From Octopus bimaculoides (taxonomy: Eukaryota): 38,229 bases of DNA. The translations under genes and the position numbers were made by a program. This document shows, one piece after another, positions 1,673-37,326 of this stretch; the stretch's first letter is position 1, and every line of letters begins with the position of its first letter. The notes beneath the pieces were generated by a model. It saw only the letters and a list, made by a program, of their open reading frames with translations. It was not told the DNA's origin and ran no database searches. Where the stretch lies: assembly GCF_001194135.2 (NCBI RefSeq), contig NC_068992.1, positions 3,589,727-3,627,955 on the forward strand, written 5' to 3'.

Positions 1673-2056
1673 CAACAGACAGAAAATAACGGAGAGGTGG
1701 ACAGTGTTTACAGATATTACACAAAAGTAAAGCACNNNNNNNNNNNNNNNNNNNNNNNNNNNNNNNNNNNNNNNNNNNNNNNNNNNNNNNNNNNNNNNNN
1801 NNNNNNNNNNNNNNNNNNNNNNNNNNNNNNNNNNNNNNNNNNNNNNNNNNNNNNNNNNNNNNNNNNNNNNNNNNNNNNNNNNNNNNNNNNNNNNNNNNNN
1901 NNNNNNNNNNNNNNNNNNNNNNNNNNNNNNNNNNNNNNNNNNNNNNNNNNNNNNNNNNNNNNNNNNNNNNNNNNNNNNNNNNNNNNNNNNNNNNNNNNNN
2001 NNNNNNNNNNNNNNNNNNNNNNNNNNNNNNNNNNNNNNNNNNNNNNNNNNNNNNNN

Positions 2057-2311: not shown

Positions 2312-2329
2312 CATAATAATAATAGTATT

Positions 2330-2468
2330 GAAAAATACCTTAGGAATGAGAACCCAGGTTCGAAATTTCTCCGAGACACCTGATGAAAGCTGGAGGATAT
2401 ATCAGCTGAAATCTTGTATTAACAACAAACAAGATGAGGACAAATATCCGTCAAAGTAAATAATGTAA
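2330..2468 (+). mobile_element. Penelope-like element terminal repeat containing a degenerate minimal hammerhead ribozyme
   Basis: GACAC-CTGATGA-A-AGCTG-loop-CAGCT-GAAA-TC-TT-GTATT at 2375-2420. The downstream part recurs inverted at ~21190-21268. Confidence 0.65.
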
Positions 2469-2720
2469 ATGGGGTATAATCTGTTGTGTTTCAAGTTCAC
2501 TGTAACTGGCACTCCGTCGGATACGACGATGAGGTTTCCAGTTGATCCGATTAACAATCAGAGGACAGGCAAAAGAAAGGAAAGAGTCATTTGTGTCTTT
2601 CTTTCTTCAGTCAAGTTCCAGAAGTCACGACCGTTTCGGGCATATATATATAATGTAACCACATGTGAAACATTAGAGATTTTTTCCCTCCGTCTTCCTT
2701 TTCTATTGGACTTTCCTCTG

Positions 2721-3040: not shown

Positions 3041-3787
3041 AATGGTTCTCCGCTGAGATAGGGTACCGTTCTAAAGATGGAGCCGGGTGCGTGTGTGTCT
3101 GTGTGTCTGCGAGAAAGAGAGAGGGGCGAGAGAGGGAGGGAGAGCGTATGTTTATGAATGTGTGACAAAGTAGAGGTACGAGTTCGAAACTCCTTAGAAG
3201 ACTTGTCTTAACAGCATACAAACTTGTCATTATTTTATGGGATCGATGAATAAAGTATCGATCAAGTACTGGAATCGATTATCCGCCTCCCCCTTACTCC
3301 TCTCTCTCTCTCTCTCACTCTCTCTCTCTCTCTCTCTCTCCCTCTCCCCCTCCCTCTCTCTGTCTTCCTCTCTTGGTCGGAGTCGGTGGCATGCAGGGGG
3401 CTGCCAGTAAAGGAAAAGTTGAAACCATAAACCCAGTGATCGTTTCCGAACCACTCTCTGGACACAATGACACGACATCATATGAATGCATGCAAACACA
3501 NNNNNNNNNNNNNNNNNNNNNNNNNNNNNNNNNNNNNNNNNNNNNNNNNNNNNNNNNNNNNNNNNNNNNNNNNNNNNNNNNNNNNNNNNNNNNNNNNNNN
3601 NNNNNNNNNNNNNNNNNNNNNNNNNNNNNNNNNNNNNNNNNNNNNNNNNNNNNNNNNNNNNNNNNNNNNNNNNNNNNNNNNNNNNNNNNNNNNNNNNNNN
3701 NNNNNNNNNNNNNNNNNNNNNNNNNNNNNNNNNNNNNNNNNNNNNNNNNNNNNNNNNNNNNNNNNNNNNNNNNNNNNNNNNNNNNNN

Positions 3788-4162: not shown

Positions 4163-4707
4163 TACATATACACGCATCATACATATGTATGTATGTATGT
4201 ATACAATATTCACCTATAACCACACGCACAAACTCACGGCATAACGGTTTTCGATTTTTGTGAAGTTTTCAAACGAGCAAAGAAAATTTCTTTTCAAATG
4301 GTCCCCCTTCCCATAATAGAAAGACACCAACGATCACAACCACATCATCATCATCATCATAATCATCATCTACAACAACAGCAACAACAACAAGTCACAC
4401 ATTTTCAGAGATAATCTCATTATTAACTTGGTTTGTTAGTAAATATTGCGATTTATTTTGTTAAATTTCGCCCACGCAATCCAACACATGTGACTTTGTG
4501 TATTATTCTGGACGCAAATGTTTACCCTACCCCCCTCTGGCCATTTGTCTGTCTGTCAGTCAGTCAGTCAGTCAGTCTGTCTGTTAGTCTGTCTGACTGC
4601 CCATCTGTCTGTTTTTCTCTTCATGTGTGTGTGTGTAGTTGTCGATAGTTAAGTATTTCTTTTGCGACGTGTTAACTCTCTCTGTTACATGTGTGCATAC
4701 ATGTGTG

Positions 4708-4713
4708 TGTAAG

Positions 4714-4764
<51 letters not shown>

Positions 4765-5683
4765 NNNNNNNNNNNNNNNNNNNNNNNNNNNNNNNNNNNN
4801 NNNNNNNNNNNNNNNNNNNNNNNNNNNNNNNNNNNNNNNNNNNNNNNNNNNNNNNNNNNNNNNNNNNNNNNNNNNNNNNNNNNNNNNNNNNNNNNNNNNN
4901 NNNNNNNNNNNNNNNNNNNNNNNNNNNNNNNNNNNNNNNNNNNNNNNNNNNNNNNNNNNNNNNNNNNNNNNNNNNNNNNNNNNNNNNNNNNNNNNNNNNN
5001 NNNNNNNNNNNNNNNNNNNNNNNNNNNNNNNNNNNNNNNNNNNNNNNNNNNNNNNNNNNNNNNNNNNNNNNNNNNNNNNNNNNNNNNNNNNNNNNNNNNN
5101 NNNNNNNNNNNNNNNNNNNNNNNNNNNNNNNNNNNNNNNNNNNNNNNNNNNNNNNNNNNNNNNNNNNNNNNNNNNNNNNNNNNNNNNNNNNNNNNNNNNN
5201 NNNNNNNNNNNNNNNNNNNNNNNNNNNNNNNNNNNNNNNNNNNNNNNNNNNNNNNNNNNNNNNNNNNNNNNNNNNNNNNNNNNNNNNNNNNNNNNNNNNN
5301 NNNNNNNNNNNNNNNNNNNNNNNNNNNNNNNNNNNNNNNNNNNNNNNNNNNNNNNNNNNNNNNNNNNNNNNNNNNNNNNNNNNNNNNNNNNNNNNNNNNN
5401 NNNNNNNNNNNNNNNNNNNNNNNNNNNNNNNNNNNNNNNNNNNNNNNNNNNNNNNNNNNNNNNNNNNNNNNNNNNNNNNNNNNNNNNNNNNNNNNNNNNN
5501 NNNNNNNNNNNNNNNNNNNNNNNNNNNNNNNNNNNNNNNNNNNNNNNNNNNNNNNNNNNNNNNNNNNNNNNNNNNNNNNNNNNNNNNNNNNNNNNNNNNN
5601 NNNNNNNNNNNNNNNNNNNNNNNNNNNNNNNNNNNNNNNNNNNNNNNNNNNNNNNNNNNNNNNNNNNNNNNNNNNNNNNNNNN

Positions 5684-5760
<77 letters not shown>
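4708..5760. other. Assembly gap flanked by (AT)n. Other large gaps: 1736-2056, 3501-3787, 9079-9267, 16443-~16996, 23208-24108, 33124-33421, 34385-35057, 35909-36277
   Basis: N-runs seen directly. Most have (TA)n on one or both sides, typical of short-read assembly breaks. Confidence 0.98.
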
Positions 5761-5769
<9 letters not shown>

Positions 5770-7527
5770 AGTGCGTAACGTTTTAAATTTCCAGCAACTA
5801 TTTTCAAAATCATTTTTATTAATTTCTCTCTTAATTTGAAATGTCTTCGACTTCTGTGCTATTTCCACCCCCATCTGTTATATACATACATACATACATA
5901 CATACACTTACAGTTACACACACACATATATAGCGTGTAAATAATATGACTATATATAATGCATAAATAATATGATTATATATATATATATATATAAAAT
6001 GTACATGTATTGCGTATGTATATACACACATACGCGTGTATATATACATTATACGTTATACGACTGAAAGTTAAGAAGCGCAAACACTTATACAACAGTG
6101 TTTATACACACATTAGTATGCTGTATACGACGTACATATACACATACACATTTAAATTAATAATGGCTATTTTATAAACATACATATACATACATGTGTG
6201 CTTGTCTCGGTGTAAATGTATGTGTGTACGCATGTATAGATATGTATATATATGTGCGTATATATATGTATTACATCCATATGTACGTATGGTATGCGTG
6301 TATGTATGTATGTATGTATGTATGTATGTATTTATGTATGTATGTATGTGTGTGTGTCTACATATATGTGTGTATGTATATATGAATGCATATACGTATA
6401 TACACACATCACATGCAGGTAGAATAGAGTATTTGTAGATTATACTTTATTGATAATATTTGATGTGGTGGGGGGGTACTTCAATAGTTCACCCTAAATT
6501 TTGTTAACAATAGCGTTCACGTTAAGTGTAGTACGCATCTGTAAAAAAAGCATTCTCATTGGTTCATTCTACTACAACATTTTTCCATTGAAGTAAAGAC
6601 ATGGCGGTCTATATTTCAAGGGTACATGACTTGTTAAAGAAGGTATTTTTATTTGTTAGTTCGCCAAAAGAAATATACCTTTAGTCTTTACTGAATTGAG
6701 ATAAAACGATTTTAGTCATTTGTTTTCCGATAATCTTAAAGGTTTTCTCATCAGATCGAAGAACATCAATTCCAATGTAGCTATGCAACCCTACAGAAAA
6801 ATAGAACAGTCTATTGTGCTTATTCCATTAATATACATAGTCATGTGACCTGCGATTGTATGGGAGGGAAATATTCGCGCGAAGCCTTGGAGCTCATGAA
6901 TATTTATTATCTAGGCGAGTTCACTTCTATTATGGTGGAAGCAACTTAGTCTTTCATGGAAAAATACCAGCCATTCTTTTAATTTATTAACAGAAAAGTT
7001 AGTTTTAAATCTTAAAAAAATATTTTCCAACATTATTGGAAAGTGTTCAATAAGTTTCCTGCGATTCTGTGACTTTATTAGACAAGAAAATTATGCGCTA
7101 GAGTTTTTCACTAGTTACAACCTTCCACCCCCAATCTGGCATGTTCTAAATTGTTGTCAGACAGACGTCAATTGAATCTGTGCCAACGCAGCCTTATTGG
7201 TCCGATTCAATTTATGTTCTGTAGGTGCGATCGTTGAACATTAGACTTACTGCCAGGCCTTCGAGAAACAACTATTTCAGTTCTGCTCCAGACTTGGCTT
7301 TTAAACATTCTATTCCACTACTTTGGATATAATCTTTTATAATTTCCAAAACTTCTTCATTATCAACAACAATCAACTACAGTCATAAAAAACAAAATAT
7401 ATTTATTTGATTAATTAAAATCAAATAATTGTATCTGCGAGTGACTACCATTACAACTGCTAGTGTGTCAAAGAAGTATTATCCACGAGATAATTACAGC
7501 TAATCAAGACTTACTACATAACATATA

Positions 7528-7560
<33 letters not shown>

Positions 7561-7624
7561 TCTACTCTATATAATATATACACACAGATATATATTTTAT
7601 TTAATTTAACAAGGAAATTCAACA

Positions 7625-8236
7625 ATGTTTCCTAACGCTACACGTGGCTATATGCCGTTTGTTTCTAACCAGAACAAAGGTAGAAACAATAAGAACGGGA
7701 AATTAAACGAGGAGTTCAAATTGCAGCCAGGCAAGGCGTATCAAGTGACGCTGAAGGACCGTCATGGATTTACTTACAGTTACATTGTCAAGGCTGACGG
7801 TTCCAAGTCACTACCAGTTCTCTGCGACTCCAAGATGTACGGACGTCGATGTGGACCTATGTCGACATCAATGCCTAACATGGATGCTAAGCAGATTCCG
7901 GGATGCAACCGAAAGTCGGACAAATCCGGCAACGACAGGACAGATTCGTCCATTAATGGTGCCAAAGGAATTCTAACATCCATCATGCGTTTTCTCAGCT
8001 CGAAAACGAAAACTAAGGCGAAGTCGAAACGGAAACCAAAATCTTTGCCCCAACGCTGTAAGCGACAAAGGACGATATCGGCTATGTCTAACTTGGACCC
8101 TATTCAGGAAAGTCCAGATGAGAACGACGAGCGCCATTTAGGAGAAGAGGAAGAAGAAGACGATAACGACTCTTATTTACACGACAGCTGCTCCTCCACC
8201 CCCGAAAGCGATAGTATAGGAAGCGGTGATGCTTAA
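7625..8236 (+). CDS. Uncharacterised 203-aa single-exon ORF (probable lineage-restricted protein): short beta-like N-terminal segment, amphipathic helix, Lys/Arg-rich patch, acidic Ser-rich tail
   Basis: Stop-free 612-nt ORF in unique, non-microsatellite sequence that is visibly more GC-rich than its flanks. Start context is ACAATG. A candidate splice acceptor (ttttatttaatttaacaag, AG at 7612-7613) lies 11 nt upstream and a candidate donor GTAAGT at 8540-8545. No transposon motifs recognised. Confidence 0.75.
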   Translation: MFPNATRGYMPFVSNQNKGRNNKNGKLNEEFKLQPGKAYQVTLKDRHGFTYSYIVKADGSKSLPVLCDSKMYGRRCGPMSTSMPNMDAKQIPGCNRKSDKSGNDRTDSSINGAKGILTSIMRFLSSKTKTKAKSKRKPKSLPQRCKRQRTISAMSNLDPIQESPDENDERHLGEEEEEDDNDSYLHDSCSSTPESDSIGSGDA

Positions 8237-9267
8237 AGAAAGAAATAGGTTTGGTATTTTTTTTTTTAAATTATAACAACGAGGAAGAGAAGGTAACTAC
8301 AGATTCCACTTCTACTGAATGGGGGAAAAGGCACTGTGGAAGAACGAGGAAAGGAGGAGACTTTTTTTAAACGAGAAAAGTTCAATATGTACGCACATCA
8401 ACATATTTTAAATATGCGTGTGTATGTATATATATTTTTCAACGTGGAAAAAAAAAACAAAAGAAAAAACAAAGCAGAAAGACTCATACTTGAGAAATTC
8501 TAACTACTAACTCTTTCCTTAAAATGATATTTATTCAAAGTAAGTGATCCCGTTGGTTAAAAGTGTATGTATATCGTTATGTTACTAGTGTTTATATATG
8601 TAAAAACTCTACATATATCTATGTATATTTTGTATATATGTATTCCTTTACCGCGGGCACTCGATAAGTATCAACATCAGCCTGGTCTCCTCGATCAGAC
8701 AGACAACAAACGAGAGACTCCGTGTGGTGTCGTGTCGAAATCAATTTGACTAATGCTCGGTGAGTTCCTTCATCAGATGTTGAGTTGCCCCTCTTCAGGG
8801 TCAGCTACAGAATTTTAATTTTACTTTATTTTATTGTTATATATATTATATATATACATCCATATATATATATATTTTTTTTGCCACGCTGCCTCGACTG
8901 CACGCCAGTAGTTCATTCCCGTCCGTTTCATTTTATCTTTTTTTTTTCTAATATATTTTCATACGGTGGGGGACGGCAGCCCCGTTATTATATTATCATT
9001 TTTTTTATCGATTGTCAGAGAAATATGTTTAAAATGTTAGTGCCCATAATATATACATACATATATATGTAATATATANNNNNNNNNNNNNNNNNNNNNN
9101 NNNNNNNNNNNNNNNNNNNNNNNNNNNNNNNNNNNNNNNNNNNNNNNNNNNNNNNNNNNNNNNNNNNNNNNNNNNNNNNNNNNNNNNNNNNNNNNNNNNN
9201 NNNNNNNNNNNNNNNNNNNNNNNNNNNNNNNNNNNNNNNNNNNNNNNNNNNNNNNNNNNNNNNNNNN

Positions 9268-13620: not shown

Positions 13621-16600
13621 ATGTATATGTATATCGTGATGAAGAGGTTAGTTATCGCAAAAGTTGGTTTCAGTAAGATGAGCAGAGATGGGGAGAATTT
13701 ATAATATATAGTCTAGGTAATTTTTCCGAATTAAAGAACTGATGCAGCAGAGGTTTTGGCAGTGAACTTGTGAATTCCATTAATTCTGTCTGCACCTTTT
13801 CTGTTGACTGACTGATATCGTTTGACGGTCACATTTTGACTTGGAAGTCAACTAAAATTTGACGGCTGCTTTTGCCTTGTAGGTCAATAATTGTGACAAT
13901 CAACCTGAATTTTTAAGGTTTTCTATTGACATTTCAACTTATATACTTATGTTAAATCTCTTTTTTTCCCCCCCTGCGGGAGTCGGATATTTCGCCGGTG
14001 CTTCTTAGGAACTTATAGTTTGTAGTTTGGGATGGAATTTAAAAACAATTTCTTGGGATCAGACAGTTTTTATTTATTTATTTTTTATTCATGGGTTAGG
14101 GTTGGGCTTGGAAATATGGGTTTCCTTGTGGATCATCAAATACTTCCTCTTCGTCTTTGTTGAAGGGCTTGCGATCCCTCACCCCTATGTTTTTGTTCTT
14201 TTTGATATGAGGATATAGAACTACAAACGTTCTGGATTGTATATTTATCAATATATATTTTTATAGAATCTTCTTATTTGTACAAATTATACCTCACTGC
14301 CTTCTGTTATTTAGGTCCTCACCCTCTCTGTTGGCTTTTCAGACTCGTACAATGGTTTCATACCAACCGTTTTTTTACCTTTTGAAGAGCGAGAAGGAAG
14401 AGGAGAGAAAAAGAGAAGGGGGTGAACCCCTAAAGAGCTCAACCATTCAAAGCAAAAGAACACAACTTAGTGTGAGAATGAGATTTTATATATTATACGA
14501 ATTCGTTTACGTTGGAAGTTATTCAATTAAACTCAATATTGGTTCAACAATTTAGCTTTAAATATTTAAAAAACTTTTTCAAAAGCCGATATCAATATCC
14601 CTCTCTCCGTGTTCCGCGCACGGATGAGCTATTTTAATAGTGATATTTGGCCTCAGAAGGCGGAAAAATAACAACAAGCATTAATAAAGAAACAAAACCG
14701 TTATATATATATATTGAGTATTCAGTAACGAAGGGAGATAATTTCGGAGTTTTGTGTAGGAGGAGTGGGTGTATGGAACCCCTTCAAGATCACAAGTGCA
14801 GTTAATGCTGTAAATGCAGCTGGCTCCTATCTTACACTATGTTCTTGACAACAGTGAGTGTGCGCATCTGCCTGCTTTGAAGGTCTATGTGTGTGTTTGT
14901 GTGAGAGTATCACATCTGTTTCTCTTTCAAAGAGAAAGTGTTACACGTATTTCTTACATATACATAGTTATATTTCTGTTGCTAAACGCTTCCATTTCAT
15001 TGGAAGCAGCTACTGAGCTCTCTATTTGATTATTGTATTCTCAAGCCTCTAATCTGTAGGATTCAGGTTTTAGTCAAGCGAATTACTTAGTGAGAGAAAT
15101 AAAAAAAAAAAAGGCCAAAAAGAAAACACACCTTTGCTAACTGAGATTAGATTAACAGATTTAGTTTGTGTGTTTCGGTGCGGTTTTTATCTAGTTTATT
15201 ACAATCAAGCAAATAACCACTCTTCGTTCGGCTTAATTATATAATGAATTCACGGCAATGATTACTGGCTGATAGAATTTTCAATGGGAAGGAGGGATTA
15301 AGATGAATCCTTTGGGATAAGTTCGATTATAGTAAATACAAGCTGTTTTACTGCTGATCATTGTCACAGTTTTTTCACTGGTCAGAGACTAACTCAAGTT
15401 AACTAACTTTCCTCGTCTAGTTTAGCTACTTCATTTTCACCATGGATCAACATTTTGCAGAGATCTTTCATAGAACCAGCCAACTGCTGAAGTCTTTCCG
15501 TTCTGCATCGTCCCCTTTAAGCTTTGACAATCTTCACATAATTCCAGATTTTGGCGGCTTCTCGAAAATTGTATCGAGAATTATTAAGTTAAATAAATTT
15601 AGAAAGAAAAAAATACTGGGCTTTTTAAAGACTGATTGAGATTGATGAATGTTCCAATGTTAGTTTGGTGCTAGTTCTGAACACTCGGACAGACCTTTGG
15701 AACTGTCACTTCACATGTCAGACACTTTGTTGGTGACGTATCACAGAATTTTACGCACATTTTCGGCCTAAAACATTTGTCCTTTTTGACAAAAATTAAA
15801 TTAAAACAAAAAAGCTTGACAGCTAAAATTTTCTGTCCGTAATTAACAAAAGTTCCGCCTTACATTCTGATATCATTCCACCGCCATTTTCTTTTTTTTT
15901 TTACCATTCTTTTCTAAATCTAATAAACATTTCCAATGCTGCTTCAATGCTCCAAATTTTCTTATGTCGCAGCAATATTGTCATTATTACTATTATTATC
16001 AATCTTTTTTTTGTTCTTATGCTAATCTGACAGTTTTGTATGTCAGTGTTACATTCGTGTCCAACATATTATATAAAATGTAATACGTTTTTTTTTTAGA
16101 TCATTAATTCTTGCTCACTTGTCCTTTTGATTCTTGTTTCATTCAAGATTAAATAAGAGGCTTTGTCTTATATTTTCATTACTACACAGATATTTCACCT
16201 TGTCCCTCTCTCCCTCTCTCTCTCTTTCTCTCTCCAGTTCATGAAATTCGTGAAAAAAAAAAAAGGAGAGGAAAATTATATATAAAAAAAATAACAACAT
16301 AATTATATTGAATTCATTGTAAAATTGGGACCAATGCATCCTGTTGTGTAAATAATGAGTGAATGGGCAAATTTGTCATTTAAATTATTATTTGAGAGTA
16401 TATGCATATGTATGTGCTCTTATGTATCATATATATATATATNNNNNNNNNNNNNNNNNNNNNNNNNNNNNNNNNNNNNNNNNNNNNNNNNNNNNNNNNN
16501 NNNNNNNNNNNNNNNNNNNNNNNNNNNNNNNNNNNNNNNNNNNNNNNNNNNNNNNNNNNNNNNNNNNNNNNNNNNNNNNNNNNNNNNNNNNNNNNNNNNN

Positions 16601-16996
16601 NNNNNNNNNNNNNNNNNNNNNNNNNNNNNNNNNNNNNNNNNNNNNNNNNNNNNNNNNNNNNNNNNNNNNNNNNNNNNNNNNNNNNNNNNNNNNNNNNNNN
16701 NNNNNNNNNNNNNNNNNNNNNNNNNNNNNNNNNNNNNNNNNNNNNNNNNNNNNNNNNNNNNNNNNNNNNNNNNNNNNNNNNNNNNNNNNNNNNNNNNNNN
16801 NNNNNNNNNNNNNNNNNNNNNNNNNNNNNNNNNNNNNNNNNNNNNNNNNNNNNNNNNNNNNNNNNNNNNNNNNNNNNNNNNNNNNNNNNNNNNNNNNNNN
16901 NNNNNNNNNNNNNNNNNNNNNNNNNNNNNNNNNNNNNNNNNNNNNNNNNNNNNNNNNNNNNNNNNNNNNNNNNNNNNNNNNNNNNNNNNNNNNNNN

Positions 16997-22503: not shown

Positions 22504-24329
22504 CACCAAACCTCCTTAAAGTGAGCTAAATTAAAATCTTCTATTAAAATTTCATTTTAATTTCTGTTCTGAACAGAAATTAATAATGAGAAAGTTATTT
22601 TACTAAATACTTCATTATTTTAAAAAAATAATTGAAACAAAAGTTCTATTTCCATAGAAATACGGTAAATATGGTTGATTTACTTAGCTTTTGTTCTCAT
22701 TCTAGAGTACTTATCGTTCTTACTCGCCCTTGTAAAACACATGAGATCTCGAAAACTAAGAAGTTCTCAGATTCAATTGAATATTTACCAAATGGTTAAG
22801 AAAAGGCCGGATTAAAATAATCTGCAGACATCATCTATAGCAATCATGAATGAAAATACAAAAATAGAAGAAGAATAACGAGAAAGATTGTGAAAGACCG
22901 ATGTTATAATTAGCAAAGTCTGAATTAATCTATTTTGGAACAAATAGTAATGACTCAAAGATTATAAAAATATAACATCTTGAAAAGGTTTCTCTTGCTA
23001 TTAATGTTCTACGAGATACTCTGTCCGTCATTAATTGTTCACAAAATTCATTTGTTCGAATTCTTTCATTTCTTTGTTTCATCTCTCAGTAATCTTAGGC
23101 ATTTATCTTAGTATTGCTCTTGGAAATGGAATAAACATCACAATTTTTCATTGATTCAATTTTGTAATTGCGAAGGTTTTGAGCCTGAGTAAGAAATCAT
23201 TTATATANNNNNNNNNNNNNNNNNNNNNNNNNNNNNNNNNNNNNNNNNNNNNNNNNNNNNNNNNNNNNNNNNNNNNNNNNNNNNNNNNNNNNNNNNNNNN
23301 NNNNNNNNNNNNNNNNNNNNNNNNNNNNNNNNNNNNNNNNNNNNNNNNNNNNNNNNNNNNNNNNNNNNNNNNNNNNNNNNNNNNNNNNNNNNNNNNNNNN
23401 NNNNNNNNNNNNNNNNNNNNNNNNNNNNNNNNNNNNNNNNNNNNNNNNNNNNNNNNNNNNNNNNNNNNNNNNNNNNNNNNNNNNNNNNNNNNNNNNNNNN
23501 NNNNNNNNNNNNNNNNNNNNNNNNNNNNNNNNNNNNNNNNNNNNNNNNNNNNNNNNNNNNNNNNNNNNNNNNNNNNNNNNNNNNNNNNNNNNNNNNNNNN
23601 NNNNNNNNNNNNNNNNNNNNNNNNNNNNNNNNNNNNNNNNNNNNNNNNNNNNNNNNNNNNNNNNNNNNNNNNNNNNNNNNNNNNNNNNNNNNNNNNNNNN
23701 NNNNNNNNNNNNNNNNNNNNNNNNNNNNNNNNNNNNNNNNNNNNNNNNNNNNNNNNNNNNNNNNNNNNNNNNNNNNNNNNNNNNNNNNNNNNNNNNNNNN
23801 NNNNNNNNNNNNNNNNNNNNNNNNNNNNNNNNNNNNNNNNNNNNNNNNNNNNNNNNNNNNNNNNNNNNNNNNNNNNNNNNNNNNNNNNNNNNNNNNNNNN
23901 NNNNNNNNNNNNNNNNNNNNNNNNNNNNNNNNNNNNNNNNNNNNNNNNNNNNNNNNNNNNNNNNNNNNNNNNNNNNNNNNNNNNNNNNNNNNNNNNNNNN
24001 NNNNNNNNNNNNNNNNNNNNNNNNNNNNNNNNNNNNNNNNNNNNNNNNNNNNNNNNNNNNNNNNNNNNNNNNNNNNNNNNNNNNNNNNNNNNNNNNNNNN
24101 NNNNNNNNATATATATATATATATAAACAAATCTAATACAAAAAAGTGTAAACACACTTGGTCAGTTCGGAGCGCCCTCTATCCCGAGCGATGGATGTAC
24201 TTCGAAGCAATCATTTCCTCATTAGTAATTATGAGCTAACTACAAGACTAGGTCTCTCTCCTATTAGATTCCAATCAAAATACTTTGACTAGTAGAACTG
24301 TCTGGTCTTAACAAAACACAGATTAGAAA

Positions 24330-32285: not shown

Positions 32286-33574
32286 ACTAATAAACCCGCG
32301 CCTATTTACATATCTAGACATAAATTAGCAATCATGAGGGTTACTAGACACCACTGTCTATTGTTATCTGGCCCAGACAGCCAGGGAAATATCGTCTGCC
32401 TTTGCATTCATGGACGATAATTATCTAATCAGCTTTCCACGGACTTTAAGGTAAACGAAGCGCATTTACAGAAAGTAAAGAGTAGAAGAGAAAACTTACT
32501 TTCCGATCAATTTTACAAATTTGATGAATGAGTCTAAGACGACATGAATGAATAAAGGTTGAATTTCCAGTTTCATATTGAAGCTGTATTAAGGATTTAT
32601 CCAGAACAAAGAGCTTCCAATTGGCCTTTTTCTCTCTCTCTCAATAGGTATTTATTTTATATTTCTTTAGAAGCGTAATCAATGTACGTTTTATGTGTAT
32701 TGTCCGTTTCTGTGTGTGCGTATAAGTGTAAATGATATGTGGATGTTTATATATGTATGTGTATGTGTGTTTGGATGTACTAGAGTGCATGTCTATGCAT
32801 GTGGTCTGTGGGTATTTATATAATATGTATGTGTGTGTTTTCATGTGTGTGAGTGTATGAGTATGTAATATGTGGGTGTTTATATATATGGGTGTTTATA
32901 TGTATGTATGTATACATGTATATATGTATGTATGTATGTATGTATATGTGAGCGCGTGAGAGTGTGCGTGGGTGTACGCGTGGGTGTGCATGAGTGCGTT
33001 TGTGAGTGCGTGTGTGTGTATAATATTTTAACTCAGCACTAGTCTTCGAGTCTTTTATTTTGATAATGGCCTAATTAAGATGCTAAACTACCACTGTCAT
33101 ATATATATATATATATATATATANNNNNNNNNNNNNNNNNNNNNNNNNNNNNNNNNNNNNNNNNNNNNNNNNNNNNNNNNNNNNNNNNNNNNNNNNNNNN
33201 NNNNNNNNNNNNNNNNNNNNNNNNNNNNNNNNNNNNNNNNNNNNNNNNNNNNNNNNNNNNNNNNNNNNNNNNNNNNNNNNNNNNNNNNNNNNNNNNNNNN
33301 NNNNNNNNNNNNNNNNNNNNNNNNNNNNNNNNNNNNNNNNNNNNNNNNNNNNNNNNNNNNNNNNNNNNNNNNNNNNNNNNNNNNNNNNNNNNNNNNNNNN
33401 NNNNNNNNNNNNNNNNNNNNNTATATATATATATATATATGTATATATATGTATATATATGTATATATGTATATATATATGTATATATGTGTATATATAT
33501 ATGTATATATATGTATATATATGTATATATATATGTATATTTGTATATATATATGTATGCATATATATATTTAA

Positions 33575-33622
<48 letters not shown>

Positions 33623-34252: not shown

Positions 34253-35265
34253 TAATTGGCATAACGCTTTCATTTTCTATCTTCTTCATATTCATATTTT
34301 CTATAATGTTATCTTTTATCATTTACTTGTTCTAGACATCACTCTCTCTCTTTATCTGTCTATATATATATGTATATATATATANNNNNNNNNNNNNNNN
34401 NNNNNNNNNNNNNNNNNNNNNNNNNNNNNNNNNNNNNNNNNNNNNNNNNNNNNNNNNNNNNNNNNNNNNNNNNNNNNNNNNNNNNNNNNNNNNNNNNNNN
34501 NNNNNNNNNNNNNNNNNNNNNNNNNNNNNNNNNNNNNNNNNNNNNNNNNNNNNNNNNNNNNNNNNNNNNNNNNNNNNNNNNNNNNNNNNNNNNNNNNNNN
34601 NNNNNNNNNNNNNNNNNNNNNNNNNNNNNNNNNNNNNNNNNNNNNNNNNNNNNNNNNNNNNNNNNNNNNNNNNNNNNNNNNNNNNNNNNNNNNNNNNNNN
34701 NNNNNNNNNNNNNNNNNNNNNNNNNNNNNNNNNNNNNNNNNNNNNNNNNNNNNNNNNNNNNNNNNNNNNNNNNNNNNNNNNNNNNNNNNNNNNNNNNNNN
34801 NNNNNNNNNNNNNNNNNNNNNNNNNNNNNNNNNNNNNNNNNNNNNNNNNNNNNNNNNNNNNNNNNNNNNNNNNNNNNNNNNNNNNNNNNNNNNNNNNNNN
34901 NNNNNNNNNNNNNNNNNNNNNNNNNNNNNNNNNNNNNNNNNNNNNNNNNNNNNNNNNNNNNNNNNNNNNNNNNNNNNNNNNNNNNNNNNNNNNNNNNNNN
35001 NNNNNNNNNNNNNNNNNNNNNNNNNNNNNNNNNNNNNNNNNNNNNNNNNNNNNNNNNTGTATGACGTAGTGGAAGAAATTAGTAGCAGGACTGGTTAGTG
35101 GACGCTTATAGACAGTGTTAGGTAGAAGGTCAACAGGTGGTTTTTTGAGTATGTGTGCGTTCGTGTTTGTGTGGGGTTGTAGGTGTTGGGTACGTGTACG
35201 TGTGTGTGTGTATTTTGTATGTGCGCGTGTGTGTATGTGTATGTTTTTGTGCGTGCGTGTGTGTT

Positions 35266-35908: not shown

Positions 35909-36599
35909 NNNNNNNNNNNNNNNNNNNNNNNNNNNNNNNNNNNNNNNNNNNNNNNNNNNNNNNNNNNNNNNNNNNNNNNNNNNNNNNNNNNNNNNNNNNN
36001 NNNNNNNNNNNNNNNNNNNNNNNNNNNNNNNNNNNNNNNNNNNNNNNNNNNNNNNNNNNNNNNNNNNNNNNNNNNNNNNNNNNNNNNNNNNNNNNNNNNN
36101 NNNNNNNNNNNNNNNNNNNNNNNNNNNNNNNNNNNNNNNNNNNNNNNNNNNNNNNNNNNNNNNNNNNNNNNNNNNNNNNNNNNNNNNNNNNNNNNNNNNN
36201 NNNNNNNNNNNNNNNNNNNNNNNNNNNNNNNNNNNNNNNNNNNNNNNNNNNNNNNNNNNNNNNNNNNNNNNNNNNNNGAATATACGAAAAAACAACAGAC
36301 GAGGACAGGTGGTGTAAATAATATAAGCGTAAGAGGAAATGGAAAATGGATGTGCTTAGTGCGCGACAAATTTTCCGTTCTGGTTACGATTCTCATTAGT
36401 AAGAATGTCTGGGCTGAATTATTAACCTTTATTCTGTCATTTTTGTTTATATGTTAATGTATGATGTATGAGTATATATGTGTGTATGTATACACGTATA
36501 TATGTACGTATATATGTGGATGTATATACATACGTGTATGTGTGTGTGTGTGTATTTGTTTTTGTGTTTTTCTTAGTAATATATCGTTTGTTTCTGTCA

Positions 36600-36922: not shown

Positions 36923-37270
36923 TTCTGATTGCAGCCCTCACATGAAATCCGGCTTTGTGCATCTCCCGGCGAACAGTTTTTGTGGAAACTGGGATCTCGA
37001 GGAGGTTTCTGCAGTAATCTTGGGAGCTGTATTTTTGTGATCCTTTCTAACAATTCGCGAAAGAGTCAAACGGTTTCCGTCTGAAAGTTTTGGTTTTCTT
37101 TCAGAGTTTTGTTTCGACGAGGAATTTTTTCCCTCTTTCCCAAAGGCTGTCATTACTTTCGAAAGAATACTTCTTGATATACGAAGCATGTTCGCTATTT
37201 TCGTTACGCTAGCACCTGCCATACGGGCACCAAGAATTTGACCTCTTTGAAAGTCCGATAGATCTGTCAT
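36921..37270 (-). mobile_element. Tc1/mariner transposase N-terminal (paired-like HTH) fragment, frameshifted and truncated
   Basis: MTDLSDFQRGQILGARMAGASVTKIANMLRISRSILSKVMTAFGKEGKNSSSKQNSERKPKLS...LSRIVRKDHKNTAPKITAE, then after a frameshift PVSTKTVRREMHKAGFHVRAAIRK. This is the classic Tc1 GRPR-like/HTH region. No DDE domain is present. Confidence 0.9.
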
Positions 37271-37326
37271 GTGCATACGTACATATATATGCGAGTATAC
37301 GTGCGTATATGTAAGTATTCGTATGT

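What the first reader, a model, noticed from the sequence alone, without database searches (positions are those of the whole stretch)
7625..8236. Orphan 203-aa protein with a PP2A-B56 docking motif (LDPIQE plus acidic tail) next to an RxRxxS site and a basic patch
Seen: this is the only convincing host ORF. Residues 157-162 are LDPIQE (nt 8093-8110), followed by SPDENDE and an E/D run. Residues 147-152 are RQRTIS (nt 8063-8080). Residues 127-139 are KTKTKAKSKRKPK. Residues 113-126 (AKGILTSIMRFLSS) look like an amphipathic helix, and 33-67 look like a small beta-rich module. Known: LxxIxE with downstream acidic or phospho residues is the PP2A-B56 docking motif (as in BubR1 and RepoMan), and RxRxxS is the Akt/RSK/S6K consensus. 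Inference: this may be a mostly disordered, lineage-restricted phosphatase adaptor or substrate with a kinase/phosphatase switch in one ~20-aa segment. I recognise no family.
Basis: partly seen in the sequence, partly recalled or inferred. Interest (0 to 1): 0.7.

Follow-up and report, generated by a model that had tools for sequence, protein, structure and literature searches.

The report
Conserved mollusc protein with PP2A-B56 dock
This octopus gene is real and encodes a small, mostly unstructured protein found across molluscs; its most conserved part looks like a strong docking site for the phosphatase PP2A-B56 next to a likely kinase target, but no binding has been tested.

Summary
The word "orphan" is wrong. 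About 100 homologues exist. Every one that carries a species name is a mollusc (cephalopods, bivalves, gastropods), all are labelled hypothetical, and none has a Pfam or PDB match. A more distant sister subfamily turns up in unnamed metagenome and SRA contigs (hhalign probability 97.9%). The gene is under strong purifying selection: dN/dS is 0.025 against Octopus vulgaris, and only the coding region is conserved against other cephalopods. AlphaFold2 predicts disorder apart from one β-hairpin and one helix. The best-conserved stretch is KRQRT[IV]SAMSNLDPIQESPxE. All 101 aligned sequences keep RxRxxS and, 4-5 residues later, [LM][DE][PT]IxE. Of these, 92 have Pro at motif position 8 and most an acidic residue after it. 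These are the features that raise B56 affinity experimentally, and a basic patch lies upstream as in KIF4A and RepoMan. My best reading is a constitutive PP2A-B56-docking protein, acting as an adaptor or pocket competitor, gated by phosphorylation of Ser152. Binding, phosphorylation and the partner of the equally conserved N-terminal peptide are all untested. This is a new, unnamed member of a known kind and of moderate interest.

The parts
7625..8236 (+). Complete single-exon coding sequence, 203 aa plus a TAA stop
   Evidence: There are 11 nt differences from O. vulgaris OX597825.1, of which 10 are synonymous and 1 is N103S. Nucleotide similarity to other cephalopod contigs runs only from 7621 to 8235.
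7607..7609 (+). In-frame TAA that closes the frame 18 nt upstream of the ATG
7625..7663 (+). Conserved N-terminal peptide MFPNATRGYMPFV (aa 1-13). Its partner is unknown.
   Evidence: M10 and P11 are invariant in 101/101 sequences, and P3, A5, G8, F12 and V13 are at or above 90%. The mean majority fraction is 0.83, second only to the B56 block. It is also kept in the sister subfamily.
7733..7831 (+). β-hairpin module (aa 37-69; strands 38-44 and 50-56) followed by the conserved KSLPxLC
   Evidence: AlphaFold2 gives pLDDT 80-95 here, the only confident part of the model. The hairpin is conserved in the mollusc-type group and absent from the sister subfamily.
7961..8005 (+). Amphipathic helix (aa 113-127), consensus G-[LI]-F-x-S-x-x-x-F-I-K-x-K
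   Evidence: AlphaFold2 predicts a helix at 115-127 with pLDDT about 65. The hydrophobic positions 116, 117, 120, 121, 123 and 124 are conserved, and the helix aligns with the sister subfamily.
8021..8041 (+). Distal basic patch KSKRKPK (aa 133-139), NLS-like, 18-24 residues upstream of the motif leucine
   Evidence: KSKRK is present in 86/101 sequences but lost in the sister subfamily.
8060..8080 (+). Proximal basic patch and basophilic-kinase consensus KRQRTIS (aa 146-152). Ser152 is the candidate phosphosite.
   Evidence: R147, R149 and S152 are invariant in 101/101 and T150 is present in 96/101. The patch lies 8-11 residues N-terminal to L157, within the roughly 15-aa range reported for B56 basic patches (PMC7108865).
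8093..8122 (+). Extended B56-type docking motif LDPIQESPDE (aa 157-166): L1, D2, P3, I4, E6, S7, P8, D9, E10
   Evidence: [LM][DE][PT]IxE is present in 101/101 sequences; E162 and E166 are invariant; P164 is present in 92/101. Codons differ synonymously between cephalopods. The affinity rules come from PMC7108865 and PMC10970375.
8123..8161 (+). Acidic run NDERHLGEEEEED (aa 167-179), variable in length and sequence
   Evidence: Mean majority fraction is 0.23; composition is conserved but sequence is not.
8162..8188 (+). Conserved C-terminal motif D-x-D-S-Y-x-H-D-S (aa 180-188), function unknown
   Evidence: D180 is present in 93/101, D182 in 87, S183 in 95, Y184 in 87 and H186 in 85. Mean majority fraction is 0.72.

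Best explanation
The ORF is a real, intronless (within the coding region) gene of an Octopus species. It encodes a member of an unnamed, mollusc-centred family of small, intrinsically disordered proteins.

Shown:
- The gene is conserved and under strong purifying selection.
- The protein is predicted to be disordered apart from a β-hairpin and an amphipathic helix.
- Its most constrained element is a 21-residue composite module, KRQR-T-[IV]-S-AMSN-L-D-P-I-Q-E-S-P-x-E.

Inferred:
- L157-E166 docks into the LxxIxE pocket of the PP2A B56 regulatory subunit without needing phosphorylation. Asp replaces the phospho-serine usually found at position 2, and P8 with acidic 9/10 matches the changes that raise affinity experimentally.
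- The KRQR patch, and possibly KSKRK, contacts the B56 acidic patch as the basic patches of KIF4A and RepoMan do.
- Ser152 sits in the 7-residue linker (aa 150-156) between the KRQR patch and the motif, within an invariant basophilic-kinase consensus. Its phosphorylation would neutralise the patch, or create a 14-3-3-type site, and so gate both B56 docking and the NLS-like basic cluster.
- The N-terminal peptide is about as conserved as the B56 block, and the hairpin and helix also look like binding surfaces. The most likely role is therefore an adaptor that brings PP2A-B56 to an unknown partner or location, or else a regulated competitor for the B56 pocket. A mere substrate is less likely.
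For: Gene reality:
- Compared with O. vulgaris there are 10 synonymous changes and 1 non-synonymous change, giving dN/dS of 0.025, while the flanks differ by 4-5%.
- Similarity to other cephalopod contigs starts 4 nt before the ATG and ends at the stop codon.
- The frame is closed 18 nt upstream.
- 82 homologues score E ≤ 0.01, including Pinctada, Ostrea, Mytilus, Magallana, Lottia, Patella, Pomacea, Biomphalaria, Lymnaea and Elysia.
- Related cephalopod sequences were assembled independently from dozens of SRA runs. Several contigs start within about 5 nt of one another, and one ends in an A-run.

Disorder: AlphaFold2 on 101 sequences gives mean pLDDT 57 and pTM 0.20, with only strands 38-44/50-56 and helix 115-127 predicted.

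The module:
- aa 146-166 has the highest conservation in the protein, with a majority fraction of 0.86 against 0.23-0.40 in the linkers.
- R147, R149, S152, E162 and E166 are invariant in 101/101 sequences. Position 160 is I in 100/101, position 157 is L (88) or M (13), position 158 is D (88) or E (13), and P164 is present in 92/101.
- Within the 21-codon block, 11 and 10 codons differ synonymously between octopus and two other cephalopods, with no amino-acid change.
- The sister subfamily keeps R-x-R-T-V-S...M-E-T-I-E-E-I-P-E even though it has lost the hairpin and KSKRK. This keeps the permitted M at position 1 and P8-E9.

Literature rules:
- L/I at positions 1 and 4 and acidic or phospho residues at positions 2, 7, 8 and 9 give the strongest binders (PMC10970375).
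- In KIF4A, changing CS to LE at positions 1-2 tightens binding 50-fold, and changing AH to PE at positions 8-9 brings KD to 0.10 µM. Basic patches within about 15 aa N-terminal to the motif enhance binding through the B56 acidic patch and resemble NLSs (PMC7108865).
Against: - No binding, phosphorylation or localisation data exist, and no complex could be modelled here.
- Motif matches in disordered regions are common: a loose B56 regex occurs in 17% of shuffles.
- The invariance covers more than the B56 consensus requires. A153, M154, S155 and N156 are also nearly fixed, so the block may serve another or an additional partner.
- Ser152 is only 4 residues from the motif. This is closer than the shortest spacing reported to support dephosphorylation in cis (12 aa), so it may not be a substrate of the docked enzyme.
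- Transcription in this Octopus species was not shown directly, and I could not verify whether the SRA runs are RNA or DNA.
- The family was not found outside molluscs and unidentified metagenome eukaryotes, so there is no characterised orthologue to lean on.
Confidence: 0.6

Rival explanations
1. The conserved block is a phosphorylation-controlled nuclear-transport or 14-3-3 switch that has nothing to do with PP2A-B56. KSKRKPK...KRQR would be an importin-α signal. Phospho-Ser152 in R-T-I-pS-A-M would bind 14-3-3 or block import. The LDPIQE match would be part of that or another partner's footprint.
For: - The basic clusters resemble NLSs, and the eLife paper itself notes that B56 basic patches look like NLSs.
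- R149-T150-x-S152 is invariant and fits the R-[ST]-x-pS core of 14-3-3 mode-I sites (my own knowledge of the motif).
- Residues 153-156, which the B56 consensus does not need, are almost invariant.
- The sister subfamily has a second invariant R-x-x-S-x-P.
Against: - The sister subfamily lost KSKRK but kept [LM][DE][PT]IxE-x-P-E exactly at the positions that matter for B56.
- The substitutions seen are only those B56 tolerates: L to M at position 1, D to E at position 2, P to T at position 3.
- 14-3-3 mode I prefers Pro at +2, whereas Met or Ile is found here.
- The two readings do not exclude each other.
Confidence: 0.2
2. The protein is simply one of many PP2A-B56 substrates. The motif recruits the phosphatase to dephosphorylate the protein's own Ser/Thr-rich tail or Ser152, with no adaptor or inhibitor role.
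For: - Most validated LxxIxE proteins are substrates or scaffolds.
- The tail is Ser-rich and acidic, with a conserved D-S-Y-x-H-D-S-S. It begins 18-25 residues after the motif, a spacing compatible with dephosphorylation in cis.
Against: - A protein whose only function is to be dephosphorylated needs some other activity, but none is recognisable: there is no domain and no Pfam match.
- The N-terminal peptide and the hairpin are as conserved as the docking module, which suggests a second binding function.
Confidence: 0.15
3. The ORF is not a functional host gene. It would be a chance ORF, a pseudogene, or a fragment of a transposon or virus.
For: - It lies in repeat-rich, AT-rich DNA with masked stretches and microsatellites.
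- It is intronless.
- Every database name for it is 'hypothetical'.
Against: - dN/dS is 0.025.
- Frames are intact across three mollusc classes.
- Conservation is restricted to the coding region.
- Pfam shows no transposon or viral domain, and there are no relatives in 2.9 million viral contigs.
- Each of the three genome assemblies looked up carried it at a single place.
Confidence: 0.02

Closest known systems
KIF4A, RepoMan (CDCA2), NHS and AIM1: PP2A-B56 interactors with a bipartite 'basic patch + LxxIxE' arrangement
   Same: A lysine/arginine cluster lies about 8-24 residues N-terminal to an LxxIxE-type motif in a disordered region. The octopus motif carries the L1, acidic-2, P3, I4, E6, P8 and acidic-9 features that made engineered KIF4A bind at 0.1-0.3 µM (PMC7108865).
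   Different: There is no sequence homology. Those proteins are large and have other domains, and their motifs mostly need phosphorylation or are weak. Here the motif looks constitutively strong, and an invariant RxRxxS lies inside the linker.
BubR1 KARD motif (KKLSPIIEDSREATH)
   Same: An L-x-P-I-x-E core followed by acidic or phosphorylatable residues, preceded by basic residues.
   Different: BubR1 needs Cdk1 and Plk1 phosphorylation at position 2 and at a downstream position (7 or 8 in the review's numbering) for tight binding. The octopus protein has Asp fixed at position 2, plus Ser-Pro at positions 7-8.
Small disordered PP2A regulators: ARPP19/ENSA and FAM122A/PABIR1 (B55 inhibitors), IER5 (B55 adaptor), BOD1 (B56 inhibitor), and the B56-binding SLiMs of CIP2A and PME-1
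   Same: Proteins of about 100-250 aa, largely disordered, that act by occupying or redirecting a PP2A holoenzyme and are controlled by basophilic or mitotic kinases (BOD1, CIP2A and PME-1; the rest from my own knowledge).
   Different: No sequence similarity was detected: the exhaustive profile search found nothing outside the family. Most of these act on B55 or on the catalytic site rather than through an LxxIxE pocket, and whether this protein inhibits anything is unknown.
Viral LxxIxE mimics (Ebola NP, HBV core linker)
   Same: They use a single LxxIxE motif as an adaptor, bringing PP2A-B56 to a neighbouring bound protein.
   Different: This one is cellular and conserved rather than viral, and no viral relatives were found.

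Membership tests
PP2A-B56 docking SLiM (LxxIxE class) | Sequence matches [LMFI]xx[ILV]xE | tested here: met
   LDPIQE at aa 157-162. The regex is met in 101/101 homologues.
PP2A-B56 docking SLiM (LxxIxE class) | The motif lies in an intrinsically disordered, accessible region | tested here: met
   The AlphaFold2 model shows no secondary structure after residue 127, and pLDDT is 50-57 over aa 131-203. This is a prediction only.
PP2A-B56 docking SLiM (LxxIxE class) | Affinity-enhancing acidic or phospho residues at positions 2, 7, 8 and 9, and a Pro-Glu type C-terminal extension | tested here: met
   Position 2 is D or E in 101/101. S7-P8 is followed by D/E/N and an invariant E.
PP2A-B56 docking SLiM (LxxIxE class) | Evolutionary conservation of the motif relative to its flanks | tested here: met
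   The block's majority fraction is 0.86 against 0.23-0.40 in the linkers. Only synonymous codon changes occur within it. It is retained in the sister subfamily.
PP2A-B56 docking SLiM (LxxIxE class) | Direct, motif-dependent binding to B56 | not testable with these tools
   Complex modelling was not available, because B56 could not be submitted to structure prediction, and no wet-lab data exist.
Basic-patch-dependent B56 interactors (KIF4A type) | A basic cluster within about 15 residues N-terminal to the motif | tested here: met
   KRQR at aa 146-149 lies 8-11 residues upstream, with R147 and R149 invariant. KSKRKPK lies 18-24 residues upstream.
Akt/RSK/S6K-type basophilic kinase substrate (RxRxxS/T) | Arg at -5 and -3 relative to a Ser or Thr | tested here: met
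   R147-x-R149-x-x-S152 is invariant in 101/101. The same pattern also fits other basophilic kinases, so the kinase is not identified.
Akt/RSK/S6K-type basophilic kinase substrate (RxRxxS/T) | Ser152 is actually phosphorylated | not testable with these tools
   No phosphoproteome data could be reached.
Orphan / taxonomically unique gene | No detectable homologues outside the species or genus | tested here: not met
   82 homologues score E ≤ 0.01, and 101 proteins score E ≤ 1 in the profile search. They come from cephalopods, bivalves and gastropods, and a sister subfamily exists.
Any curated protein family or solved structure | A significant match to Pfam-A or to a PDB sequence | tested here: not met
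   The best Pfam match has E 0.082, below its cutoff. The best PDB matches have E 0.19 on the hairpin only, and the C-terminal half finds nothing.
Transposon or viral ORF | Similarity to transposase, polymerase or viral proteins, or presence in viral contigs | tested here: not met
   Pfam shows no such domain, and no relative was found in IMG/VR.

The most novel reading that the evidence does not exclude
This family may be a dedicated, lineage-specific regulatory partner of PP2A-B56. It would be a small disordered protein that binds the B56 pocket constitutively and with sub-micromolar affinity, and that a basophilic kinase switches off (or hands to 14-3-3 or importin) by phosphorylating Ser152. 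It would therefore act as a signal-controlled inhibitor or targeting subunit. That would make it a B56 counterpart of the ENSA/ARPP19/FAM122A-B55 systems, with the conserved N-terminal peptide and β-hairpin specifying where the phosphatase is delivered.
Probability: 0.25. Interest if true: 0.65.

Novelty: new member of a known kind. Interest (0 to 1): 0.42.

Why it matters
PP2A-B56 clients are recognised through one short motif, and almost all validated examples come from vertebrates, yeast or viruses. This family shows that motif, together with its basic patch and a kinase site, frozen across hundreds of millions of years of mollusc evolution in an otherwise fast-evolving disordered protein.

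If binding is confirmed, the family would provide three things:
- a natural high-affinity B56 ligand;
- a testable example of kinase-gated phosphatase docking;
- a functional handle on a protein that every mollusc genome annotation currently lists as 'hypothetical'.

If binding is not confirmed, it still stands as a well-supported new protein family with three unexplained invariant peptides.

Tried and rejected
- **Pfam scan of the protein.** Only a chance-level PASTA-like match.
- **PDB sequence searches with the family profile and with the C-terminal half.** The profile gave only E 0.19 matches of the hairpin to phage tail-tube proteins, which I treat as chance; the C-terminal half gave nothing.
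- **Exhaustive profile search of 1.84 billion representatives.** Outside the family it found only bacterial SprB/Big/cadherin-type repeat proteins, which match the β-hairpin through repetitive T-x-T-x-V strands. I rejected these as compositional. One weak hit, P0089, proved to be a true distant relative.
- **Literature searches for LDPIQE and for locus, sample and run identifiers.** Nothing found.
- **Look-up of the exact window protein in public assemblies.** Not on record, so direct RNA evidence for this species could not be obtained.
- **Identifying the organisms behind the unnamed homologues.** Only sample codes were returned, so the taxa remain unknown.
- **Viral-contig scan.** No relatives.
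- **Fold search of the AlphaFold2 model.** Not run, because a model with pTM 0.20 would give meaningless matches.
- **N-terminal peptide and D-S-Y-x-H-D-S motif.** I compared these from memory with known short motifs: EH-domain NPF, PP1 RVxF, calcineurin PxIxIT/LxVP, PP4 FxxP, ERK FxFP, YxxΦ, LIR and the β-TrCP degron. None fits convincingly.
- **Strict NLS consensus patterns.** These are only loosely matched, so I describe the basic cluster as 'NLS-like' only.
Full report
**1. The observation**

The window carries an ATG-to-TAA open reading frame at 7625-8236 on the + strand, encoding 203 residues.

| Element | Residues | Nucleotides |
|---|---|---|
| LDPIQE | 157-162 | 8093-8110 |
| RQRTIS | 147-152 | 8063-8080 |
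| KTKTKAKSKRKPK | 127-139 | 8003-8041 |
| AKGILTSIMRFLSS | 113-126 | 7961-8002 |
| SPDENDE, then an E/D run | 163-169 onward | 8111-8131 onward |

The frame is closed by a TAA 18 nt upstream of the ATG, and the start context has A at -3.

The window itself is AT-rich animal DNA with 12 runs of N totalling 4,541 bases. Those runs explain the overlapping 'ORFs' in several frames that the ORF listing reports at, for example, 4584-5874 and 23148-24157. None of the remaining long ORFs has a Pfam match, apart from a weak Tc3-type transposase helix-turn-helix remnant at 36938-37276 (-).

**2. Where the window comes from**

The window aligns colinearly with Octopus vulgaris chromosome OX597825.1 at about 5.75 Mb, but at only 87-96% identity. 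It therefore comes from a close relative or a divergent haplotype, not from that assembly. The exact protein is not on record in the assembly collection.

**3. Is it a gene?**

Yes. The evidence is as follows.

- Against O. vulgaris the 612-nt ORF has 11 differences, of which 10 are synonymous and one is N103S. The flanks differ at 4-5% of positions and also carry indels.
- Nei-Gojobori counting gives dS 0.082, dN 0.002 and dN/dS 0.025.
- Against two more distant cephalopod sequences (L002 and L012), synonymous sites are saturated (pS about 0.8) while pN is 0.11-0.14.
- Nucleotide similarity to those contigs begins 4 nt before the ATG and ends at the stop codon, with no similarity at all in the flanks.
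- Homologous coding sequences in other genomes and metagenome contigs are also uninterrupted single ORFs.
- For the related cephalopods, the same transcript-sized contigs were assembled independently from at least 10 and at least 57 sequencing runs. Three contigs start within about 5 nt of one another, and one ends in a long A-run. This suggests an unspliced polyadenylated mRNA, but I could not verify whether those runs are RNA or DNA.

**4. It is not an orphan**

A search of 5.8 billion protein clusters found 82 homologues at E ≤ 0.01. Every one that carries a name is from a mollusc: Octopus, Pinctada, Ostrea, Magallana, Mytilus, Lottia, Patella, Pomacea, Nucella, Biomphalaria, Lymnaea, Candidula, Arion, and later Elysia and Plakobranchus. 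All are labelled hypothetical or uncharacterised.

Nothing recognised matches the family:
- No Pfam model matches.
- No PDB sequence matches.
- An exhaustive HMMER profile search over 1.84 billion representatives found only 11 family clusters at E < 1e-30. Beyond those came bacterial repeat proteins that match the hairpin by composition, a 69-residue C-terminal fragment of the family (P0087) and one weak hit, P0089.

P0089 seeds a sister subfamily of about 13 clusters, known only from SRA and metagenome contigs of unidentified organisms. Profile-profile comparison with the mollusc group gives 97.9% probability, E = 4e-13, over 150 colinear columns. No relatives occur in viral contigs. The family is therefore lineage-restricted (molluscs plus at least one unidentified animal group) and uncharacterised, but it is not unique to octopus.

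**5. Anatomy**

AlphaFold2 with a 101-sequence alignment gives mean pLDDT 57 and pTM 0.20. The only confident element is a β-hairpin with strands 38-44 and 50-56 (pLDDT 80-95). There is also a helix at 115-127 (pLDDT about 65). Everything else is predicted to be disordered.

Conservation is strongly modular:

| Segment | Residues | Mean majority fraction |
|---|---|---|
| N-terminal peptide M-[FY]-P-N-A-T-x-G-Y-M-P-F-V (M10 and P11 invariant) | 1-13 | 0.83 |
| Hairpin module | 37-69 | 0.67 |
| Helix | 113-127 | 0.55 |
| KSKRKPK region | 133-145 | 0.65 |
| KRQRTISAMSNLDPIQESPDE | 146-166 | 0.86 |
| D-x-D-S-Y-x-H-D-S | 180-188 | 0.72 |
| Linkers and the acidic run | remaining residues | 0.23-0.40 |

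The sister subfamily lacks the hairpin and KSKRK. It keeps the N-terminal peptide, the helix and the 146-166 module.

**6. The motifs**

By itself an LxxIxE match is weak evidence. In shuffles of this protein, the strict motif occurs in 2.3%, a loose B56 regex in 17%, and RxRxx[ST] in 12.7%. Both motifs within 15 residues occur in 0.04%.

The decisive evidence is conservation:
- All 101 aligned sequences have R-x-R-x-x-S followed 4-5 residues later by [LM][DE][PT]-I-x-E.
- R147, R149, S152, E162 and E166 are invariant. Position 160 is Ile in 100 of 101, position 2 of the motif is always Asp or Glu, and Pro164 is present in 92 of 101.
- The constraint is on the peptide, not the DNA. In the 21 codons for KRQR...SPDE, 11 codons (L002) and 10 codons (L012) differ from the octopus window, and every change is synonymous.

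**7. Fit to what is known about B56 docking**

The literature gives these rules:
- The strongest binders have L and I at positions 1 and 4, and acidic or phosphorylated residues at positions 2, 7, 8 and 9 (PMC10970375).
- In KIF4A, changing positions 1-2 from CS to LE increased affinity 50-fold. Changing positions 8-9 to PE brought KD to 0.10 µM, because the Pro positions the Glu for a salt bridge with B56γ R201 (PMC7108865).
- The same paper shows that a basic patch within about 15 residues N-terminal to the motif enhances binding, through a dynamic interaction with a conserved acidic patch on B56. It also notes that such patches resemble NLSs.

The octopus sequence reads L1-D2-P3-I4-Q5-E6-S7-P8-D9-E10. 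The sister subfamily reads M1-E2-T3-I4-E5-E6-I7-P8-E9. KRQR lies 8-11 residues upstream and KSKRKPK 18-24 residues upstream. Every sequence-level criterion of the class is met, and the motif looks like a strong binder that does not depend on phosphorylation.

**8. Most likely mechanism**

*Shown:* a conserved, selected, largely disordered protein whose most constrained element is this composite module.

*Inferred:*
- (a) Residues 157-166 dock in the B56 LxxIxE pocket.
- (b) The KRQR and KSKRK patches add affinity through the B56 acidic patch, and may alternatively serve as an import signal.
- (c) Ser152 lies in an invariant basophilic-kinase consensus inside the short linker. It is a control point, because phosphorylation there would add negative charge next to the basic patch. 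R-T-[IV]-pS would also resemble a 14-3-3 mode-I core (my own knowledge of the motif), whose binding would mask both neighbouring elements.
- (d) The N-terminal peptide is about as conserved as the docking module, and the hairpin and helix look like further binding surfaces. The protein is therefore more likely an adaptor, or a regulated pocket competitor, than just a substrate.

Ser152 is only four residues from the motif. The shortest spacing reported to support dephosphorylation in cis is 12 residues. I therefore favour Ser152 as a regulator of docking rather than a target of the docked enzyme. The Ser-rich tail, 18 or more residues downstream, is a more plausible target in cis.

I put 0.6 on motif-dependent B56 docking being the function of the module. 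I put about 0.25 on the stronger reading of a dedicated, kinase-gated B56 regulator.

**9. Rivals**

- The block may be a phospho-regulated NLS or 14-3-3 switch unrelated to B56 (0.2). The near-invariance of residues 153-156, which B56 does not require, argues for some additional constraint. However, the substitutions tolerated at motif positions 1-3 are exactly those B56 allows, and the sister subfamily kept the motif while losing KSKRK.
- The protein may be a plain substrate (0.15).
- The ORF may be a non-gene or derived from a mobile element (0.02). This is effectively excluded.

**10. Comparison and novelty**

The module works like the basic-patch-plus-LxxIxE arrangement of KIF4A, RepoMan, NHS and AIM1, and like the BubR1 KARD. 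It shares no homology with them.

As a small disordered phosphatase partner it recalls ENSA/ARPP19, FAM122A, IER5 and BOD1. No sequence relationship to any characterised protein was detectable, and most of those act on B55 or on the catalytic site.

I classify the finding as a new, unnamed member of a known kind (LxxIxE-type B56 interactors) and of moderate interest. The case for conservation is unusually clean, but the mechanism is a familiar one, the lineage is narrow, and nothing has been tested experimentally.

**11. Limits**

- No complex could be modelled, because B56 cannot be submitted to the structure tool.
- The organisms behind the unnamed homologues could not be identified.
- Expression in this species was not shown.
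- The partners of the N-terminal peptide, the hairpin and the D-S-Y-x-H-D-S motif remain unknown.

Noticed in passing
window 1736-2056, 3501-3787, 4765-5683, 9079-9267, 16443-16996, 23208-24108, 33124-33421, 34385-35057, 35909-36277 and three 10-base runs: There are twelve runs of N totalling 4,541 bases (masked repeats or assembly gaps). They create the very low-GC windows in the composition profile and the spurious long 'ORFs' that overlap in several frames in the ORF listing.
   Followed up: yes
whole window versus L001 (O. vulgaris OX597825.1, about 5.75 Mb): The window is colinear with the O. vulgaris reference but only 87-96% identical, and the encoded protein differs by N103S. It therefore comes from a closely related Octopus species or a divergent haplotype. 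One short segment (window 2313-2470) matches in the inverted orientation.
   Followed up: partly
window 36938-37276 (-): A 112-aa ORF has a weak match to the Tc3/mariner transposase helix-turn-helix (Pfam PF11427, E 0.0015, below the curated cutoff). It is probably a decayed transposon remnant.
   Followed up: no
window 7625-7663 (aa 1-13) and 8162-8188 (aa 180-188): Two further peptides are nearly invariant across the family and fit no short motif I know: M-[FY]-P-N-A-T-x-G-Y-M-P-F-V at the N-terminus (M10 and P11 in 101/101) and D-x-D-S-Y-x-H-D-S near the C-terminus.
   Followed up: partly
P0089-P0101; loci L009-L011 and L027: A sister subfamily (236-276 aa, single-exon) is known only from SRA and metagenome contigs of unidentified organisms. 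It lacks the β-hairpin and KSKRK, keeps R-x-R-T-V-S...M-E-T-I-E-E-I-P-E, and has an extra invariant R-x-x-S-x-P.
   Followed up: partly
window 7527-7570 and 33422-33620; also the contig ends of L012-L014: (TA)n and (TATATATG)-type microsatellites lie immediately upstream of the gene and elsewhere in the window. Similar microsatellites flank the orthologue in another cephalopod, where the assemblies break.
   Followed up: no
L002-L005 (related cephalopod contigs): About 640 nt upstream and 160 nt downstream of the coding sequence align colinearly at about 71% between two non-octopus cephalopods (L002 and L012). Neither has any similarity to the octopus flanks. Three independent assemblies start within about 5 nt of one another, which suggests a transcription start roughly 680 nt upstream of the ATG.
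   Followed up: partly
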